Shown: one piece after another, positions 43-46,726 of the stretch | How positions within the stretch are numbered: the stretch's first letter is position 1 | Layout: every line of letters starts with the position of its first letter | Virus record (IMG/VR): IMGVR_UViG_3300024502_000010 | Location: 124,001 to 188,000 of that record | Reading direction: 5' to 3' (one strand) | DNA: 64,000 bases | Made by a program: the position numbers and the translations under genes | The notes under the pieces: model-generated | What the model saw: only the letters and a program-made list of their open reading frames with translations | What the model was told of the DNA's origin: nothing | Databases searched by the model: none

Positions 43-753
43 TTATTCAATAGTGATGGAAGGTGCATCAACACACTCAGAACACCCTTCACGAGACCAA
101 CCAAGTGCTTCAGACACTGCAGGAAACTGGCAAGTAAAGATGCAACGAACAAGTTCTGCAATTTCCATGTGTTCCTTCTGTGTACCATGAGCAGAACGAA
201 GATCAATATAATGAATCCATGACCTTACAGAACCGGTCATATAGAGTCTTGTAGGCGTCGCTAAGGGCAGTACAAACCTTGCACACTCCTTTGCCACACC
301 CTTCTCTAAAAGGCGGTTATAAAGGCGTAGAGACTGCTCAAAATGAACGCGGATATCTTCTGTCAGTGTCAGTTTCAGATAGTCGGGAATATCATCAATA
401 GAGTTCTGACGGTTCTTTGTATCTTGGCGGCGCAGTTCAGGCAGAGGAATAGTGCTATTCAGAAGATTTGTATCAGCATATCGTTGCGAAAATTCTTGAT
501 ATGTAAATGAACGATGGCGAAGAATCTGAGCTGCTAGTCCACGAGTAGTATTGATTTCAACAGTCATTGAAGCTTGTTCAAAGATACTCCAGTGTTGATG
601 TTGGATGCAATACTTGAGAAGACCAGAAAACTTATCATTATCCTGATTAGCAGGATTACTTACCCGAGCACAATATGCCATATGCTTTTCTGCATCGGGA
701 GTAACACTAATGAGTTTTACTTCTGGTTTCATAAACTCAAAATCATCGTACAT
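43..753 (-). CDS. thyX: FAD-dependent thymidylate synthase ThyX
   Basis: ThyX signature RHRSFTYQEFSQRY, plus HWSIFE and EISARFVLP-like ECARFVLP; ATG at 753 or 732 is more likely than the track start at 795. Confidence 0.95.
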   Translation of the reverse strand: MYDDFEFMKPEVKLISVTPDAEKHMAYCARVSNPANQDNDKFSGLLKYCIQHQHWSIFEQASMTVEINTTRGLAAQILRHRSFTYQEFSQRYADTNLLNSTIPLPELRRQDTKNRQNSIDDIPDYLKLTLTEDIRVHFEQSLRLYNRLLEKGVAKECARFVLPLATPTRLYMTGSVRSWIHYIDLRSAHGTQKEHMEIAELVRCIFTCQFPAVSEALGWSREGCSECVDAPSITIE

Positions 754-4900: not shown

Positions 4901-5962
4901 TCAAAGTGCGTTGCCCCGAGGCAAAACTTCCTCTGGAAAAACAAAATTTTCATGTGGTTGGTCTACGGGAGCCATCCAAGCACGAAGCCCTTCGTTAAGA
5001 AGTATATTCTTCGTGTAGAAAGTTTCGTATTCCGGATTGACGGCTGCTTCAATCTCCTGACTAACAAAGTCGTAAGCACGAAGATTGAGAGCAAGACCGA
5101 TAATCCCGATAGAAGATGTCCAGAGACCCATGACGGGAACAAAGAGCATAAAGAAATGTAACCAACGCTTGTTACTAAAAGCAATTCCAAAGATTTGCGA
5201 CCAGAAACGGTTAGCAGTAACCATTGAATAGGTTTCTTCCTCTTGTGTTGGTTCGAATGCCTTGAATGTATTTGCTTGATCACTATCTTCAAATAGTGTG
5301 TTTTCTACAGTTGCTCCGTGAATAGCACAGAGCAGTGCTCCACCCAGTATACCAGCAACACCCATCATATGAAATGGGTTAAGAGTCCAGTTGTGAAAAC
5401 CCTGAAGGAACAGAAGGAACCTGAAGATAGCAGCAACACCAAAGGAAGGTGCAAAGAACCAACTGGATTGACCCAGAGGGTACATCAGGAAGACGCTCAC
5501 AAACACTGCGATGGGACCAGAGAATGCAATTGCGTTGTAAGGACGGATGCCTACCAGTCGTGAGATCTCAAACTGGCGAAGCATAAATCCGATCAGACTA
5601 AAGGCCCCGTGGAGCGCCACAAAAGTCCATAGTCCCCCAAGTTGGAACCACCTGACGATATCCCCTTGAGCCTCAGGACCCCAGAGCAGAAGAAGAGAAT
5701 GACCCATAGAATCTGCTGGAGTACTAACTGCTGCAGTAAGAAAGTTTGCACCCTCAAGATAGGAACTCGCAAGCCCGTGAGTATACCAACTCGTGACGAA
5801 AGTTGTCCCAGTAATCCAACCACCAAGAGCAAGATAAGCAGTGGGAAAAAGAAGAAGTCCAGACCAGCCAACAAAAACGAAACGGTCTCTTTTAAGCCAG
5901 TCATCGAGTACATCAAACCATCCTCGTTGTTGAATAGGTTGTGAAAGTGTAGAAGAAGTCAT
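4901..5962 (-). CDS. psbD: photosystem II D2 protein
   Basis: Near-identical to D2 ([14 protein letters not shown]...[10 protein letters not shown]); no intron. Confidence 0.99.
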
Positions 5963-6153: not shown

Positions 6154-6179
6154 AAAAAAAGAGGGTTGTTACACCCTCT
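6154..6179 (-). terminator. Rho-independent terminator
   Basis: AGAGGGT-GTAACA-ACCCTCT followed by T7. Confidence 0.8.
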
Positions 6180-6201
6180 AATTATATCAGTTATTCAGTT
6201 G

Positions 6202-6246
6202 TTATCAACCAATTGAAGGTGCAGTGAGAGCAACAGGAGTTGCTTC
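6202..6246 (-). pseudogene. psbA: orphan 3' end of a second psbA allele
   Basis: GAA GCA ACT CCT GTT GCT CTC ACT GCA CCT TCA ATT GGT TGA TAA = [13 protein letters not shown], matching the D1 C-terminus. Confidence 0.85.
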
Positions 6247-6276
6247 AGAAAACTGAGGATAGGTTTTTATTATTAC

Positions 6277-6582: not shown

Positions 6583-7317
6583 TTATCTTTTGTTTCTATT
6601 ATAAGTTGCTCTTACAGCATCAAAAGATACTCTATCCTTTTCCTTTTCATCATCGGGAAGATTTGAATATGATGTATTAGCAAGTTTTGCTCTTCTTTGT
6701 TTCTTTTCTGGTGTTTGGTCTGTACTTGTTTTAGCAGTTCTTGCCCAACCCTGATGAACTGCATCAGCACCTGCTTCTCTTGAAGTTCCACTACCACTTC
6801 TTTCACCTCTTCTAATAGCACGAAGGGCAGCGGCAGCAGATGAACGATTTGCTGCTCTACCGAAAGAACGCTTATCACCAGATGCTCTACCATATCCATA
6901 TCTTTTATCTAATGCAGCATCAGATGCTTTCTCATAAGGACTATCCTCTCTTTCTATAATATTGTCTCTCCACTCTTCACTCATATTCACCATAATTGCT
7001 TCTGCTGCTTGTTGAGTATCAGCATATCCTTCATCAAGTAAGTGTGAAAGAATTAGATCGTAAACATCTACTTCTTCTTTTGCTAAATCAGAATCGACAC
7101 GAACATTTGAACCTGTTCTTACATTTCTTCTTGCTGCTGCCTGATGAGCGCGGCGTCTTGCCATCCAAGCACCACTTATACCACCACTATCTACATCTTG
7201 TGCATCTCTCTTTCTTAACATTCCTTTGACTTTTCTATCAGAGATTTCATCCAGTTGCTGATTTTCAACAACTTCCATATATGCTTCTTGAAGATTGCGA
7301 AGTTCTTGTGCGTCCAT
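6583..7317 (-). CDS. late modular hypothetical protein (cyanophage LLDEGYA-module family)
   Basis: Late box CTAAATA upstream; module YDLILSHLLDEGYADTQQAAEAIMVNMSEEWR shared with the 63027 ORF. Confidence 0.8.
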   Translation of the reverse strand: MDAQELRNLQEAYMEVVENQQLDEISDRKVKGMLRKRDAQDVDSGGISGAWMARRRAHQAAARRNVRTGSNVRVDSDLAKEEVDVYDLILSHLLDEGYADTQQAAEAIMVNMSEEWRDNIIEREDSPYEKASDAALDKRYGYGRASGDKRSFGRAANRSSAAAALRAIRRGERSGSGTSREAGADAVHQGWARTAKTSTDQTPEKKQRRAKLANTSYSNLPDDEKEKDRVSFDAVRATYNRNKR

Positions 7318-7332
7318 TTTTATGAATACTTT

Positions 7333-7695
7333 TTAGTTATTTAGGTATTCTATCATCTTTTGAAGAGTGCTGATGTTGTCTCCTACAAGACCTAATGCAG
7401 TGTTGCAGTTGTTACAGAGAACACCACGAACCTTATTTGTAGAGTGGCAGTGGTCTATACACTTCTTGGTTAGTTCCACATCACATATTTGGCAGTTCTC
7501 ATTCTTCATTAGGTCATTATATTGGTCTTCTGTAAGTTTAAATCTGCGTCTAGCATATTCGTGAGTCTTATAATATTGCCTACGAACTTCCCGTTCACAA
7601 TCCTTACACTTTGATTGAACCCCAGAAGGTCTACTACTTCTTTTAGAGAAACTATCAAGTTCTTTTGTTTCTCCACATCTACTACAAGTTTTCAT
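7333..7695 (-). CDS. endonuclease VII-family homing endonuclease (F-CphI-like)
   Basis: CQIC...IDHCH..NKVRGVLCNNCNTALG Endo VII motif; N-terminal CxxC/CxxC; position downstream of psbA; start ATG at 7695. Confidence 0.88.
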   Translation of the reverse strand: MKTCSRCGETKELDSFSKRSSRPSGVQSKCKDCEREVRRQYYKTHEYARRRFKLTEDQYNDLMKNENCQICDVELTKKCIDHCHSTNKVRGVLCNNCNTALGLVGDNISTLQKMIEYLNN

Positions 7696-7740
7696 TATGG
7701 TATGGAAGTTTGGTATGGAACTATTTATGAATAATACCAT

Positions 7741-7768
7741 AAAAAAAGAGACCTGTAAAGGTCTCTTC
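7741..7768 (-). terminator. psbA terminator
   Basis: AAGAGACC-TTTACA-GGTCTCTT followed by a T-run. Confidence 0.8.
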
Positions 7769-7792
7769 ATTCTTATTCAGTTTTTATAAAAC

Positions 7793-8872
7793 TCAACCGA
7801 TTGCGGGTGCAGTAAGGGCAACAGGAGTGTTGCTAGCAGCAGCAAGATCCAGAGGGAAATTGTGTGCATTCCTTTCGTGCATCACCTCGAGCCCGAGTCC
7901 AGCACGGTTCAGAACATCTGCCCAAGTGTTGAGGACACGACCCTGTGAATCAATGATGGACTGGTTAAAGTTGAAACCGTTGAGGTTGAATGCCATGGTG
8001 CTAACACCAAGAGCAGTGAACCAGATACCAACTACAGGCCATGCAGCAAGGAAGAAGTGCAGCGAACGTGAGTTATTAAAGGAAGCATATTGGAAAATAA
8101 GGCGTCCGAAATAACCGTGAGCAGCAACGATGTTATAGGTCTCTTCTTCTTGACCAAACTTGTAACCATAGTTCTGTGACTCGTTCTCAGTGGTTTCACG
8201 AACCAGTGAGGAAGTAACCAGAGAACCGTGCATAGCACTGAACAGAGAACCTCCAAAGACACCAGCCACACCAAGCATGTGGAAGGGGTGCATCAGGATG
8301 TTGTGCTCTGCCTGGAACACAAGCATATAGTTGAACGTACCAGAGATACCCAGAGGCATCGCATCAGAGAAAGAACCTTGACCGAAAGGATACACCAGGA
8401 ACACAGCAGAAGCAGCAGCCACAGGTGCAGAGTAAGCAACACAGATCCAAGGACGCATACCAAGACGGTATGAAAGTTCCCATTCACGACCCATGTAAGC
8501 GTAGATACCGATAAGGAAGTGGAACACTACAAGTTGGAAAGGACCACCGTTGTAAAGCCACTCATCAAGCGAAGCAGCTTCCCAGATGGGATAAAAGTGC
8601 AGTCCAATCGCGTTGGACGAAGGAATAACAGCACCAGAGATGATGTTGTTTCCGTACATGAGTGAACCAGCAACGGGTTCACGGATACCATCAATGTCCA
8701 CTGGGGGAGCACCGATGAATGCGATGATGAAACAAGTCGTAGCAGCAAGCAGGCAAGGAATCATGAGGACTCCGAACCAACCGACATAAAGACGATTATC
8801 GGTTGATGTGACCCAGTTGCAGAATTGTTCCCAAGTATTCGATTGTCGTTGACGTGAAATTGTAGCAGTCAT
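7793..8872 (-). CDS. psbA: photosystem II D1 protein
   Basis: Full D1 sequence; E130; H332/E333 retained; no intron. Confidence 0.99.
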
Positions 8873-42238: not shown

Positions 42239-42242
42239 AAGG

Positions 42243-42330
42243 TACGAGTGGGTGGATTCGAACCACCTCAAAGCCGCTAATCTGGCGGAAAGAGTTTATA
42301 AGACTCCTCTGACTACCAAGTCTCACTCGC
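42243..42330 (-). tRNA. tRNA-Ile(UAU) with long variable arm
   Basis: GCGAGUG/CACUCGU; GGAGU-CUUAUAA-ACUCU; variable arm CCGC/GCGG; UUCGAAU T-loop. Confidence 0.8.
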
Positions 42331-44838: not shown

Positions 44839-44953
44839 AGGTTTGTCCCTGTGATACTATTATATACTAATCACAGACATTTCAAAGTCAATTTTTTGTG
44901 TTCATATCGTAACACTGTTGAAGAAAATATTAAATTTGTAACTTAACTTAAAA

Positions 44954-45038
44954 CGGAAAGGGTGGGATTCGAACCCACGGATGCTTTCACATCGCTAGTT
45001 TTCAAGACTAGAGCCTTCAACCACTCGACCACCTTTCC
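44954..45038 (-). tRNA. tRNA-Ser(UGA)
   Basis: CUAGU-CUUGAAA-ACUAG; long variable arm; G73. Confidence 0.95.
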
Positions 45039-45048
45039 AGTGGGAGGT

Positions 45049-45300
45049 TCAACGAACCTCAAAATCCAAACGCTTTACTTTGCGTTGGCGTCTTGCCTCT
45101 TGCCAGGCAATATCTTGTGAAGTCAGAACATTTGATTTTTGTTCTTTCTGAATAGAGTTTAACATAACAATACGAGATAAGTCAAGTGCTGAAATCTTAT
45201 CTCCACGAATTGTTGCCATATTAGGACAACCACAGGTCACTGTTTTTGAATGATGTCCTGTTATTTCTCTATTACAATCTTTGCATCTTATTGAAATCAT
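45049..45300 (-). CDS. small Cys-rich (zinc-ribbon-like) protein
   Basis: CKDC...CGCPN. Confidence 0.7.
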   Translation of the reverse strand: MISIRCKDCNREITGHHSKTVTCGCPNMATIRGDKISALDLSRIVMLNSIQKEQKSNVLTSQDIAWQEARRQRKVKRLDFEVR

Positions 45301-45315
45301 TATTCTTCATCCTAA

Positions 45316-45750
45316 TCATTGCAGGTGTGCTCTCAACTGCCAAACAAACTTACCATGAGATTCCATCAAATCTTGAACTAAATTTGCTGTAGCATATGAC
45401 TTTTGATTTTCAGACTCTTCCGAAATTTCTCCCATCAATTCACAAAACTTGGTATTGTTATCAAGAAGTTCTTGAAGCATTTCTTTTGCTCCGGTTGAAC
45501 TTGCTGCCTCTTTGATTTGAGTTACCTCAAGCATTCTTGAGAGAGAACTGAGAGGTTTTACATTCAGATAACGCATATGTTCTGAGAGACGATCAATCTC
45601 TTCAAACATAGTCTCATACTGACCACCAAAGAGTTGATGTAGTTGAGTGAAATCTTCACCTACAACATTCCAGTGAAATGCCCAAGTTTTATGGAATAAA
45701 ACAAAAAGCGATGACTGTGCATCACTCAAGAGTTTATAAAGTTTTTCCAT
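45316..45750 (-). CDS. dps: Dps/ferritin-like DNA protection protein
   Basis: HWNVVG..F..LH.LF..QY......D..SE and H.K..WQL motifs. Confidence 0.92.
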   Translation of the reverse strand: MEKLYKLLSDAQSSLFVLFHKTWAFHWNVVGEDFTQLHQLFGGQYETMFEEIDRLSEHMRYLNVKPLSSLSRMLEVTQIKEAASSTGAKEMLQELLDNNTKFCELMGEISEESENQKSYATANLVQDLMESHGKFVWQLRAHLQ

Positions 45751-45778
45751 TATACTCTTTTTGAAATATTTATGCAAA

Positions 45779-45795
45779 TGGGAGCAGAGGGATTC
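45779..45795 (-). pseudogene. orphan tRNA 3' end (T-arm 3' strand, acceptor 3' strand and A73)
   Basis: GAAT-CCCTC-TGCTCCC-A directly after the HNH gene. Confidence 0.6.
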
Positions 45796-45801
45796 ATTTT
45801 T

Positions 45802-46338
45802 TTACTTATTCATACAAAACTTAGGATGTTGCTTGTCCTTACTGTAACGTCCACCGTTACTCTTTTGGGGTGGTAAAGTTTTTTGTGCGTGGCAGTTGGG
45901 ACAGACCACTTGTAGATTTTCAGGGGCGTGGTTGAAAGGGTCGTCGTCTATGTGGTCCACCTCAAGGCAGGTTCGTCCGGTATGAATGTTTGTTCCAGAC
46001 CAACCACAAAGGGAACACTTACCCCCACTCGCTTCTAATAAGTAAGCACGAACACCGCTGGGAACATAACCCTGCCCTGTATGGTTCAGTTCTCCTACTT
46101 TCCACTTATCTATTGTCCATTGTCTCTTGGCTGCAGCACTACACTTGTTAGAACAGAACTTGCCAGTAGAACTCTTTTTCTTATAGTCAAACTCTACACT
46201 GCAGTAATTACAGATGGCGGTGTCCCAACCAGTTCTTTTCCTCTTAGGAGACTTCTTATTATTATAGGTTACAGAACACGAACGGGAGCAGAACTTAGGT
46301 TTATCGTTCTCACACCCGCAGTTTAAACAAGTAGTCAT
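45802..46338 (-). CDS. HNH homing endonuclease
   Basis: CSLC...LEVDHID.....N...NLQVVCPNCH; N-terminal FCSRSC / FCSNKC zinc repeats. Confidence 0.9.
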   Translation of the reverse strand: MTTCLNCGCENDKPKFCSRSCSVTYNNKKSPKRKRTGWDTAICNYCSVEFDYKKKSSTGKFCSNKCSAAAKRQWTIDKWKVGELNHTGQGYVPSGVRAYLLEASGGKCSLCGWSGTNIHTGRTCLEVDHIDDDPFNHAPENLQVVCPNCHAQKTLPPQKSNGGRYSKDKQHPKFCMNK

Positions 46339-46392
46339 AATAGAACCGAATACCTTTTATTATTTATAACACAAGTATTCGTTTTAGTAAAG

Positions 46393-46464
46393 TGCCCGAA
46401 GAGGGACTTGAACCCCCAACATTTTCGGTGTAAACGAAACGCTCTGCCTTTGAGCTATTCGGGC
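46393..46464 (-). tRNA. tRNA-Val(UAC)
   Basis: GCCCGAA/UUCGGGC; UUUCG-UUUACAC-CGAAA. Confidence 0.92.
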
Positions 46465-46466
46465 AA

Positions 46467-46540
46467 GCTCCCATCGTAGGTACTGCCCCTACCAATCTCT
46501 GATTAACAGTCAGGCCCGTTCGCTTGCTCGGTCGATGGGA
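46467..46540 (-). tRNA. atypical tRNA-Asn(GUU)
   Basis: UCCCAUC/GAUGGGA, G73; CUGA-CUGUUAA-UCAG; T-loop GGCAGUA; D-loop lacks GG. Confidence 0.7.
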
Positions 46541-46614: not shown

Positions 46615-46654
46615 TTTGGCGTCTTTCTATGCTATCTGCATAACGACTACCAAG

Positions 46655-46726
46655 AGCGAAAGACGAGATTCGAACTCGCAACAACCTGCTTGGAAGGCAG
46701 GGACTCTACCGTTGAGTTACTTTCGC
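46655..46726 (-). tRNA. tRNA-Gly(UCC)
   Basis: CCUGC-CUUCCAA-GCAGG; U73. Confidence 0.95.

What the first reader, a model, noticed from the sequence alone, without database searches (positions are those of the whole stretch)
45779..46464. HNH cassette swapped a tRNA: intact tRNA-Val upstream, stranded tRNA 3' end downstream
Seen: tRNA-Val(UAC) ends ...UUCAAGU-CCCUC-UUCGGGC-A. After the HNH gene comes GAAT-CCCTC-TGCTCCC-A, with the same T-stem strand and A73 but a different acceptor strand. This is the same geometry as the psbA scar. Established: T4 SegB and T5 nucleases home within tRNA clusters. Inference: the cassette supplied a diverged, cleavage-resistant tRNA 3' half and left the old one behind, so 3'-end replacement may be a general invasion route in this phage.
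Basis: partly seen in the sequence, partly recalled or inferred. Interest (0 to 1): 0.7.

Follow-up and report, generated by a model that had tools for sequence, protein, structure and literature searches.

The report
Homing-nuclease cassette replaced a phage tRNA-Val
In this river cyanophage, a mobile block carrying an HNH nuclease gene and its own valine tRNA overwrote the resident valine tRNA gene and left its last 13-17 bases as a scar; beside it sits a valid-looking but unannotated, oddly shaped asparagine tRNA.

Summary
The 17-mer at 45779-45795(-) is not a chance match. Its last 16 bases are the exact 3' end of an intact tRNA-Val(UAC) ("type I", GGGAGCA...TGCTCCCA) in 57 related phage contigs. 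In 53 of these the tRNA lies directly upstream of the same dps gene.

The intact tRNA-Val upstream of the HNH gene differs from type I in both acceptor strands and in the anticodon stem. So a whole foreign "type II" tRNA-Val came in, not just a 3' half.

The nearest relatives (flanks 99-100% identical) are not empty at this locus. They carry tRNA-Asn, then a paralogous HNH gene (53% identical), then an intact type I tRNA-Val.

The swapped tract is 46537..45796: a non-canonical tRNA-Asn, the type II tRNA-Val and the HNH gene. The HNH gene still carries 30 nt of its earlier home. It joins the old T loop at a 3-4 nt GAA(T) microhomology.

Several results fit a free-standing homing endonuclease of the kind known from the T4 SegB tRNA cluster: the cassette occurs in three diverged genomic backgrounds, dN/dS is about 0.1, and an empty-site allele exists. 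Cleavage and target specificity remain untested.

Side finding: about 140 cyanophage loci hold covarying, mitochondrial-like tRNA-Asn or tRNA-Val genes that replace the canonical ones.

The parts
46654..46726 (-). tRNA-Gly(UCC). This is context only. It and the spacer below it form the last stretch that is 100% identical to relative L031, just before the swapped tract.
   Evidence: ARAGORN; Rfam 67.7 bits; identity profile
46468..46540 (-). Non-canonical tRNA-Asn(GUU)-like gene (ncAsn), 73 nt. It has a 3-bp D stem with loop AGCAAGCGAA, T loop GGCAGTA, G8 and discriminator G. It occupies exactly the position of the canonical tRNA-Asn in L031. The left breakpoint of the swap lies between 46538 and 46537.
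   Evidence: Missed by standard ARAGORN and by Rfam at E<=1. Called mtRNA-Asn(gtt) by ARAGORN -mt. Scores 95.3 bits with family model R1. Covariation measured on 34 distinct homologues. Breakpoint.
46393..46464 (-). Intact 'type II' tRNA-Val(UAC), acceptor stem GCCCGAA/TTCGGGC, A73. It is foreign to this lineage. It is the only tRNA-Val in the 204.8-kb genome.
   Evidence: As this exact sequence it occurs only together with the HNH gene. Type II relatives sit at the syntenic site of other cyanomyoviruses.
46361..46368 (-). TATAAATA, matching the T4-type late-promoter consensus, 22 nt upstream of the HNH start codon. It lies inside a spacer homologous to the one upstream of HNH-B in L105.
   Evidence: This is a consensus match only; function is inferred.
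45802..46338 (-). HNH-B, a 178-aa free-standing HNH endonuclease ORF. It has two N-terminal CxxC...CxxC modules followed by the HNH motif.
   Evidence: Pfam PF01844 (23.9 bits against a 21.4 cut-off) and phrog_1271. 53% identical to HNH-A of L031. dN/dS 0.07-0.13 against L103 (same contig as L068), L105 and MA10.
45792..45821 (-). Thirty nt carried along from the cassette's former home, the spacer upstream of the Zn-ribbon gene in phages without dps. It includes the last codons and the stop codon of HNH-B and ends in the GAA(T) microhomology.
   Evidence: Alignments with L130 (empty site) and L105
45779..45795 (-). Scar of the resident 'type I' tRNA-Val(UAC): T-loop GAAT, T-stem CCCTC, acceptor strand TGCTCCC and A73. 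Positions 45791..45779 are unambiguous.
45767..45774 (-). CATAAATA late-promoter-like motif of dps. A sigma-70-like TTTGCA-18-TATAAT (45778..45749) overlaps it. It is conserved in relatives directly after the intact type I tRNA-Val.
   Evidence: consensus match only
45316..45750 (-). dps/ferritin-like gene, the right-hand flank. Identity to L076 and L031 resumes at 45795.
   Evidence: Pfam PF00210, E 3.7e-21
44953..45300 (-). Zn-ribbon ORF (45049-45300) and tRNA-Ser(UGA) (44953-45039). These are syntenic markers: in phages without dps the Zn-ribbon gene directly follows tRNA-Val.

Best explanation
The locus is the footprint of a free-standing HNH homing-endonuclease cassette that overwrote the resident tRNA-Val gene.

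Shown:
1. The ancestral state of this lineage was tRNA-Gly, tRNA-Asn, HNH-A, type I tRNA-Val, dps, as in L031 and L076.
2. In the window, the tract from position 4 of tRNA-Asn to position 56 of type I tRNA-Val has been replaced. The replacement holds a non-canonical tRNA-Asn, a type II tRNA-Val and HNH-B.
3. HNH-B's original home was the spacer just 3' of a tRNA-Val gene in phages without dps. L130 is the empty site and L105 the filled one.
4. The copy here still carries 30 nt of that spacer. It is fused to the old tRNA's T loop at a 3-4 nt GAA(T) microhomology. One illegitimate join therefore made the chimera.
5. The identical junction is now found in at least three diverged genomes.

Inferred:
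1. HNH-B cuts or nicks cassette-free genomes near the tRNA-Val gene during co-infection. Repair from a cassette-bearing genome then copies in the cassette together with its flanking tRNA genes (co-conversion), as shown for T4 SegB.
2. The type II tRNA-Val keeps the phage supplied with the UAC isoacceptor while the conserved type I sequence is removed.
3. The scar plus the conserved dps promoter serves as the right-hand homology arm.
For: - The scar equals the type I tRNA-Val 3' end at the syntenic site in 57 loci.
- Flank identity to L031 is 99-100% down to 46538. Identity to L076 is 99.5% from 45795 onward. Between these points identity is 14-72%.
- The type II tRNA-Val of this exact sequence occurs only with HNH-B, in 7 contigs plus the window.
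- In L068 the cassette is far more conserved than its surroundings: tRNA-Val 100% and HNH-B 94% identical, against dps at 62% aa and flank DNA at 46-92% per 50-nt bin, mostly 58-78%. L053 is a third genomic background.
- HNH-B is under purifying selection, dN/dS 0.07-0.13, and has an intact HNH motif.
- The empty and filled sites, L130 and L105, define the original insertion.
- HNH-A shows the same pattern: 90-97% identity across phages whose dps is only 51-75% identical.
- Precedent: SegB recognises GGTTCRANTCC, cuts at the 3' ends of tRNA genes and spreads flanking tRNA genes. T5 F-Tfl genes also lie in a tRNA cluster (PMC2330249).
- This is not an assembly artefact. Single contigs bridge both junctions in independent runs and samples.
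Against: - There is no biochemical or genetic evidence that HNH-B cleaves anything, and its target is unknown.
- The type II tRNA-Val keeps a T arm almost identical to type I (GGGGGTTCAAGTCCCTC against GGGGGTTCGAATCCCTC). A purely T-arm-directed enzyme would probably cut its own genome.
- dS between the window and L068 copies is 0.26, so that spread is not very recent.
- tRNA clusters recombine readily even without nucleases.
- The direction of the last exchange (allele A to B, or B to A) cannot be rooted from the data held.
Confidence: 0.7

Rival explanations
1. One reading: the HNH cassette replaced only the 3' half of the resident tRNA-Val. This produced a hybrid, cleavage-resistant tRNA and left the old 3' end downstream.
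For: The geometry fits (intact tRNA, HNH gene, stranded 3' end). Old and new also share the T-stem strand CCCTC and A73.
Against: The intact tRNA's 5' acceptor strand is GCCCGAA rather than GGGAGCA. Its anticodon stem (TTTCG/CGAAA against CTGCT.../...GCAGA) and its D arm also differ, with compensatory partners. The same type II acceptor occurs in whole tRNA-Val genes of other cyanomyoviruses. The swap also extends upstream into tRNA-Asn.
Confidence: 0.03
2. Passive mosaicism. The block was exchanged by ordinary or illegitimate recombination between co-infecting phages at conserved tRNA sequences. The HNH gene is a passenger, or has another role, and does not drive the exchange.
For: The tRNA cluster is highly mosaic: several different tRNAs lie next to tRNA-Val in relatives. 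The left breakpoint lies at the shared start of two tRNA genes. The right junction is a microhomology join that needs no site-specific nuclease.
Against: Two paralogous HNH genes each spread across phages with far more diverged flanks. Purifying selection acts on the ORF. The type II tRNA-Val is strictly linked to HNH-B. A clean empty/filled pair exists. There is close precedent for nuclease-driven inheritance of tRNA regions (PMC2330249).
Confidence: 0.2
3. Integrase-type insertion into a tRNA gene. The element carries a copy of the tRNA 3' end, restores the gene on one side and leaves a partial duplicate on the other, as with attL and attR.
For: The geometry matches: a whole tRNA, then the element, then a tRNA 3' fragment.
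Against: There is no recombinase; the only ORF between the two copies is the HNH gene. The two 3' ends match at only 11 of 17 positions. The whole tRNA differs, not just the part distal to a crossover site.
Confidence: 0.02
4. The 17-mer is kept because it is functional where it now sits, for example as part of the dps promoter or UP region, or as an RNA-processing signal for the HNH/dps transcript. On this view it is not a neutral scar.
For: It is identical in all 9 allele-B copies, including the diverged L068 and L053. The dps promoter-like motif starts 4 nt after it.
Against: With cassette DNA identity averaging roughly 94%, 17 unchanged bases are expected about one time in three. No hairpin or known motif lies within it. 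In ancestors the same bases were simply the end of the tRNA gene.
Confidence: 0.08

Closest known systems
T4 SegB, a free-standing GIY-YIG homing endonuclease in the T4 tRNA gene cluster (PMC2330249)
   Same: Both are free-standing nuclease genes inside a phage tRNA cluster. In both, the gene is absent from close relatives and transfers together with flanking tRNA genes while the recipient's tRNA markers are lost. SegB recognises the T-psi-C motif and cuts at tRNA 3' ends; here the scar junction lies in the T loop. In relative L031 the HNH-A stop codon lies inside the next tRNA, as the segB stop abuts tRNA-Arg.
   Different: This gene has the HNH fold, not GIY-YIG. No cleavage or cross data exist. 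Here a functional isoacceptor of the same anticodon is brought in, and a 13-17 nt scar of the old gene remains.
T5 F-TflI, F-TflII and F-TflIV, HNH nicking endonucleases in the T5 tRNA region (cited in PMC2330249; the rest from my own knowledge)
   Same: They are HNH-family, free-standing, and located among phage tRNA genes.
   Different: No detectable close sequence relationship was tested or found. Their targets and any role in allele replacement were not compared.
S-PM2 F-CphI, an endonuclease VII-type gene next to psbA (Zeng et al. 2009 and Millard et al. 2010; my own knowledge, the latter cited in PMC10690425)
   Same: It is a cyanomyovirus free-standing homing endonuclease next to a highly conserved gene. 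This window has an Endonuclease_7 ORF after psbA and a stranded psbA 3' end.
   Different: It belongs to a different nuclease family and has a different target. It is relevant only as the second case of the same geometry.
Integrase-mediated insertion into tRNA genes (att duplication of the tRNA 3' end)
   Same: The layout is the same: whole tRNA, element, partial tRNA 3' end.
   Different: There is no integrase, the repeats are not alike, and the entire tRNA was exchanged.

Membership tests
Free-standing HNH homing endonuclease gene | HNH (beta-beta-alpha-metal) catalytic motif with flanking Cys pairs | tested here: met
   Pfam PF01844 scores 23.9 bits against a 21.4 cut-off, and phrog_1271 gives E 2e-22. 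The motif CSLCGW...EVDHIDDDPFNH...NLQVVCPNCH is intact.
Free-standing HNH homing endonuclease gene | Own ORF between genes, not inside an intron or intein | tested here: met
   The ORF at 45802-46338 lies between a tRNA gene and the scar, with a TATAAATA motif 22 nt upstream.
Free-standing HNH homing endonuclease gene | Presence/absence polymorphism at one site among close relatives | tested here: met
   L130 is empty and L105 filled at the original site. Alleles 0, A and B all occur among phages whose dps is 98-100% identical.
Free-standing HNH homing endonuclease gene | Gene more conserved than its flanks (lateral spread), with the protein under selection | tested here: met
   In L068, HNH-B is 94% and tRNA-Val 100% identical against dps at 62%. 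dN/dS is 0.07-0.13.
Free-standing HNH homing endonuclease gene | Site-specific cleavage or nicking of the allele that lacks the gene | not testable with these tools
   Needs purified protein and DNA substrates.
Free-standing HNH homing endonuclease gene | Nuclease-dependent biased inheritance in mixed infection | not testable with these tools
   Needs phage crosses. The window comes from a river metagenome, not an isolate.
SegB-like (GIY-YIG) tRNA-cluster homing endonuclease | GIY-YIG catalytic domain | tested here: not met
   Pfam finds only HNH families.
SegB-like (GIY-YIG) tRNA-cluster homing endonuclease | Located in a phage tRNA cluster and co-transferred with neighbouring tRNA genes | tested here: met
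Integrase-type tRNA-gene insertion (att sites) | Recombinase gene in the element, and near-identical direct repeats of the tRNA 3' end | tested here: not met
   The only ORF is the HNH gene. The two 3' ends match at 11 of 17 positions.
Canonical bacterial-type tRNA (for the element at 46468-46540) | Matches the Rfam RF00005 / ARAGORN standard model; has U8, G18G19 and a T54-psi55-C56 loop | tested here: not met
   No Rfam hit at E<=1 and no standard ARAGORN call. It has G8, D loop AGCAAGCGAA and T loop GGCAGTA.
Canonical bacterial-type tRNA (for the element at 46468-46540) | Four-arm cloverleaf kept by compensatory changes, a 7-nt anticodon loop with U33, and a discriminator fitting the anticodon | tested here: met
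   95.1% of cells are paired, and 13 of 20 pairs show changes on both sides. The covariation score is 0.609, against 0.17 shuffled and at most 0.07 slid. Discriminators are G73 with GUU and A73 with UAC. That these are identity elements is my own knowledge.
Canonical bacterial-type tRNA (for the element at 46468-46540) | Processed, CCA-tailed and aminoacylated | not testable with these tools
   Only assembler contigs of the metatranscriptomes are held, so no read ends are available.

The most novel reading that the evidence does not exclude
The tRNA-Val/tRNA-Asn corner of cyanomyovirus genomes is the site of an arms race between homing endonucleases and their tRNA-gene targets. Three interchangeable classes of tRNA-Val gene (type I, type II, non-canonical) and two of tRNA-Asn are kept in circulation. 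Nucleases overwrite one class with another. The mitochondrial-like genes, which lack the universally conserved D-loop and T-loop DNA motifs, are functional tRNAs that escape nucleases reading those motifs (or escape host tRNA-directed defences).
Probability: 0.2. Interest if true: 0.85.

Novelty: new member of a known kind. Interest (0 to 1): 0.6.

Why it matters
- **Natural record of a process seen in the lab.** It shows base by base how a homing-endonuclease cassette can overwrite an essential-type small gene yet leave the phage with a working substitute. SegB work demonstrated this in the laboratory, but it has not been documented for cyanophages, which are among the most abundant viruses in water.
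- **Source of tRNA-cluster variability.** It helps explain why cyanophage tRNA clusters vary so much. It also provides dated recombination markers (scar, carried spacer).
- **Candidate nucleases.** It points to two uncharacterised HNH enzymes that probably recognise tRNA-gene neighbourhoods.
- **Under-counted tRNAs.** If the non-canonical tRNA-Asn and tRNA-Val genes are real tRNAs, tRNA counts in cyanophage genomes are too low. Bacterial-type translation would then tolerate tRNAs without the canonical elbow.

Tried and rejected
- **Chance statistics inside the window.** They could not settle the question, so I used relatives instead.
- **PDB sequence search for HNH-B.** Only remote McrA-type HNH matches came up, E 0.007, so there is no characterised close homologue.
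- **Phage-isolate collection.** It holds no near relative of this locus; the best hit is S-SRM01 at 65%. It also has no match to ncAsn.
- **5' pattern for type II tRNA-Val.** It was useful only after filtering.
- **Close cassette-free relative of L068 or L053.** I looked for one to map a second conversion tract. The best flank match was 85%.
- **Run contigs laid on the region.** They confirmed the assembly and the river origin. They gave flat word depths, so they say nothing about expression or RNA ends.
- **Prokaryote-genome scan for the non-canonical motif.** Most hits were chance. Five showed the fold: three with the full ncAsn cloverleaf (19 of 20 pairs) on MAG contigs, one of them a 2.6-kb low-GC contig that is probably phage DNA; a Cys-anticodon version in a Verrucomicrobiales MAG (19 of 20); and a weaker variant (13 of 20) in a second Verrucomicrobiales MAG.
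- **Deletion derivative of allele A.** I considered that allele B might derive from allele A by deletion. I rejected this because the bases after the HNH-B stop codon align with the L130/L105 spacer, not with tRNA-Val positions 1-56.

Full report
**Setting.** The window is bases 124001-188000 of a 204,829-bp, 36.7% GC contig. Its gene content marks it as a T4-like cyanophage: psbA, psbD, gnd-like and dps genes and a tRNA cluster. It is abundant in river metagenomes, with contig depth about 286, and it is also present in metatranscriptome assemblies. All genes discussed here lie on the - strand.

**Observation.** ARAGORN and Rfam call an intact tRNA-Val(UAC) at 46393-46464 (69.4 bits). A 178-aa ORF at 45802-46338 matches Pfam HNH above threshold. 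Six bases after its stop codon comes GAATCCCTCTGCTCCCA (45795..45779). The dps promoter-like motif and the ATG at 45750 follow. This sequence has the form of a tRNA 3' end: T-loop GAAT, T-stem CCCTC, acceptor strand TGCTCCC and A73. Within the window alone it is not statistically remarkable.

**Comparative test.**
- The 16-mer occurs in 79 IMG/VR loci.
- In 57 of them it is the exact 3' end of an ARAGORN tRNA-Val(UAC) beginning GGGAGCA ("type I").
- In 53 of those 57 the tRNA lies directly upstream of a dps homologue, and in most of them the same promoter/ATG context (..ATAAATA..TATAATGGAA..) is visible. The other four have the Zn-ribbon gene there.
- Eight loci show the window's arrangement, and 14 are unrelated hits.
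- Phages with 98-99% identical dps and no HNH nearby exist (L004, L072, L079, L002, L041).

**What was replaced.** The intact tRNA differs from type I in both acceptor strands (GCCCGAA/TTCGGGC against GGGAGCA/TGCTCCC), in the anticodon stem and in the D arm, always with paired changes. It is a complete, different gene ("type II"). Type II tRNA-Val genes are the resident gene at the syntenic site (Arg-Gly-Asn-Val-Zn-ribbon-Ser) in other cyanomyovirus contigs. The window's exact version occurs in IMG/VR only next to this HNH gene, in 7 contigs.

**Nearest relatives and breakpoints.**
- L031 is 99-100% identical to the window down to 46538.
- L076 is 99.5% identical from exactly 45795 to 44071.
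- Between these points L031 carries a canonical tRNA-Asn, a 143-aa HNH ORF (HNH-A, 53% identical to the window's HNH-B, E 1e-49) and an intact type I tRNA-Val. The reading frame of HNH-A runs 21 nt into that tRNA.
- The window carries instead a non-canonical tRNA-Asn, the type II tRNA-Val and HNH-B.

The exchange therefore swapped one nuclease-bearing allele for another. It did not fill an empty site.

**Origin of the cassette.** HNH-B homologues (74% aa) lie in L105-L109 and in Synechococcus phage MA10. Each sits directly downstream of a non-canonical tRNA-Val that shares the type II acceptor stem, in phages without dps. L130 is the matching empty site: HNH-B' is inserted 15 nt after the tRNA, and the last codons of the ORF come from target-site DNA.

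The window's HNH-B still ends with 30 nt of that spacer (45821..45792). It then switches to CCCTCTGCTCCCA. The bases GAA(T) are shared by both parents. A single illegitimate, microhomology-level join to the T loop of a type I tRNA-Val therefore created the chimera.

**Spread.**
- The same junction occurs in L068 (dps 62% identical, HNH-B 94%, tRNA-Val 100%) and in L053 (dps 65%).
- HNH-B has dN/dS of 0.07-0.13.
- HNH-A is 90-97% identical across phages whose dps is only 51-75% identical.
- Single contigs from several samples bridge both junctions, which rules out mis-assembly.

**Mechanism.** These features meet every sequence-level criterion for a free-standing homing endonuclease gene. The closest studied case is T4 SegB. 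It recognises the T-psi-C motif GGTTCRANTCC, cuts at tRNA 3' ends, and drives inheritance of its gene and neighbouring tRNA genes while the recipient's markers are lost (PMC2330249). A later paper shows that segB homologues are generally associated with tRNA genes (PMC13096335).

I infer that HNH-B acts in the same way, and that the type II tRNA-Val travels with it as a co-converted, function-preserving flank. What HNH-B cuts is unknown. The near-identity of the two T arms argues against a purely T-arm target.

**Side finding: a non-canonical tRNA family.** The element at 46468-46540 looked like a decayed tRNA-Asn, but it belongs to a large family.
- A motif scan found more than 119 viral contigs. 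They yield 34 distinct 73-nt sequences of two kinds: anticodon GUU with G73, and UAC with A73.
- The cloverleaf is strongly supported by covariation. 95.1% of cells are paired, and 13 of 20 pairs change on both sides. The score is 0.609, against 0.17 shuffled and at most 0.07 slid.
- The D and T loops are conserved but non-canonical.
- Standard ARAGORN and Rfam miss these genes, whereas ARAGORN's mitochondrial mode calls mtRNA-Asn. Family model R1 finds one copy in the window, at 95.3 bits.
- They replace the canonical genes. None of 43 loci with the Val form has a canonical tRNA-Val(UAC). Only 3 of 94 loci with the Asn form have a canonical tRNA-Asn.
- The window's genome has no canonical tRNA-Asn.
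- In isolates (S-N03, MA10 and relatives) the Val form lies unannotated.
- One Verrucomicrobiales MAG has the same scaffold with a Cys anticodon.

**Second scar.** psbA (7793-8872) is followed by an Endonuclease_7 ORF and a 244-aa ORF. After these comes a second copy of the psbA 3' end, matching at 31 of 36 bases, together with the stop codon, AACTGAATAA and a terminator-like hairpin, at about 6165-6250.

**Verdict.** The locus is a new member of a known kind: a tRNA-cluster homing endonuclease with co-conversion. The record of its history is unusually clear, and the non-canonical tRNA family deserves study in its own right.

Noticed in passing
window 46468-46540 (-); loci L002, L003, L068, L105, L110-L219: A family of 73-nt non-canonical tRNA-like genes with Asn GUU or Val UAC anticodons. 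They have G8, a 3-bp D stem with loop AGCAAGYGAA, and T loop GGCAGTA / AGCGTTA / GGCGGAA. Covariation is strong. They are mutually exclusive with the canonical isoacceptor gene. Standard ARAGORN and Rfam miss them, and they are unannotated in isolates S-N03, MA10, MA01, ME01 and MC09.
   Followed up: yes
L375 (Verrucomicrobiales MAG contig), around 5293-5313 (-): The same non-canonical scaffold with a Cys (GCA) anticodon and 19 of 20 pairs, in a bacterial MAG. A weaker variant is in L372. The fold may not be confined to cyanophages.
   Followed up: no
window 6165-6250 (-), with ORFs 7333-7770 (-) and 6583-7317 (-): A stranded copy of the psbA 3' end (31 of 36 bases, plus the stop codon, AACTGAATAA and a hairpin followed by a T run). 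It lies downstream of an Endonuclease_7-domain ORF and a 244-aa ORF, and upstream of psbD. The geometry is the same as at tRNA-Val.
   Followed up: partly
L031 730-1161 (-) and tRNA-Val 678-750 (-): The HNH-A reading frame runs 21 nt into the next tRNA-Val gene. 5' processing of that tRNA would therefore cut the mRNA before its stop codon. This resembles the segB/tRNA-Arg arrangement discussed in PMC2330249.
   Followed up: partly
L013 7707-7779: A non-canonical tRNA-Asn that breaks off after about 48 nt into unrelated sequence. This appears to be a truly truncated copy.
   Followed up: no
L030 / L104 (HNH-B region): This contig's HNH-B region is one base longer, and the protein match stops at residue 159. 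This is either a frameshifted copy or a sequencing error.
   Followed up: no
window 42241-42330 (-): ARAGORN calls a 90-nt tRNA-Ile(UAU) with the anticodon at position 31, which is unusually long. Similar 88-90-nt calls recur in relatives, and 90-nt 'tRNA-Phe' calls appear in L002 and L033. These may contain introns or be mis-called non-standard genes.
   Followed up: no
L008, L027, L046, L050, L073, L076 (between tRNA-Gly and tRNA-Asn); L049, L057: ARAGORN reports tRNA-like genes with undetermined anticodons: a 4-nt 'gaca', and 2-nt 'ta' and 'ca'. These are further odd tRNA-like elements in the same corner of the cluster.
   Followed up: no
L028 4685-4983 (-); L065 1930-2230 (+): ARAGORN calls permuted tmRNA-like genes (tag ANNIVAFSRS(K/N)TTALV) overlapping tRNA-Leu in two cyanophage contigs.
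   Followed up: no
run X1, record 5 on window 46476-46533: A low-depth contig (6.8 against 286) shares only the core of the non-canonical tRNA-Asn and diverges on both sides. Its acceptor stem is of the TCCAGAT type. A second phage with another allele co-occurs in the same sample.
   Followed up: no
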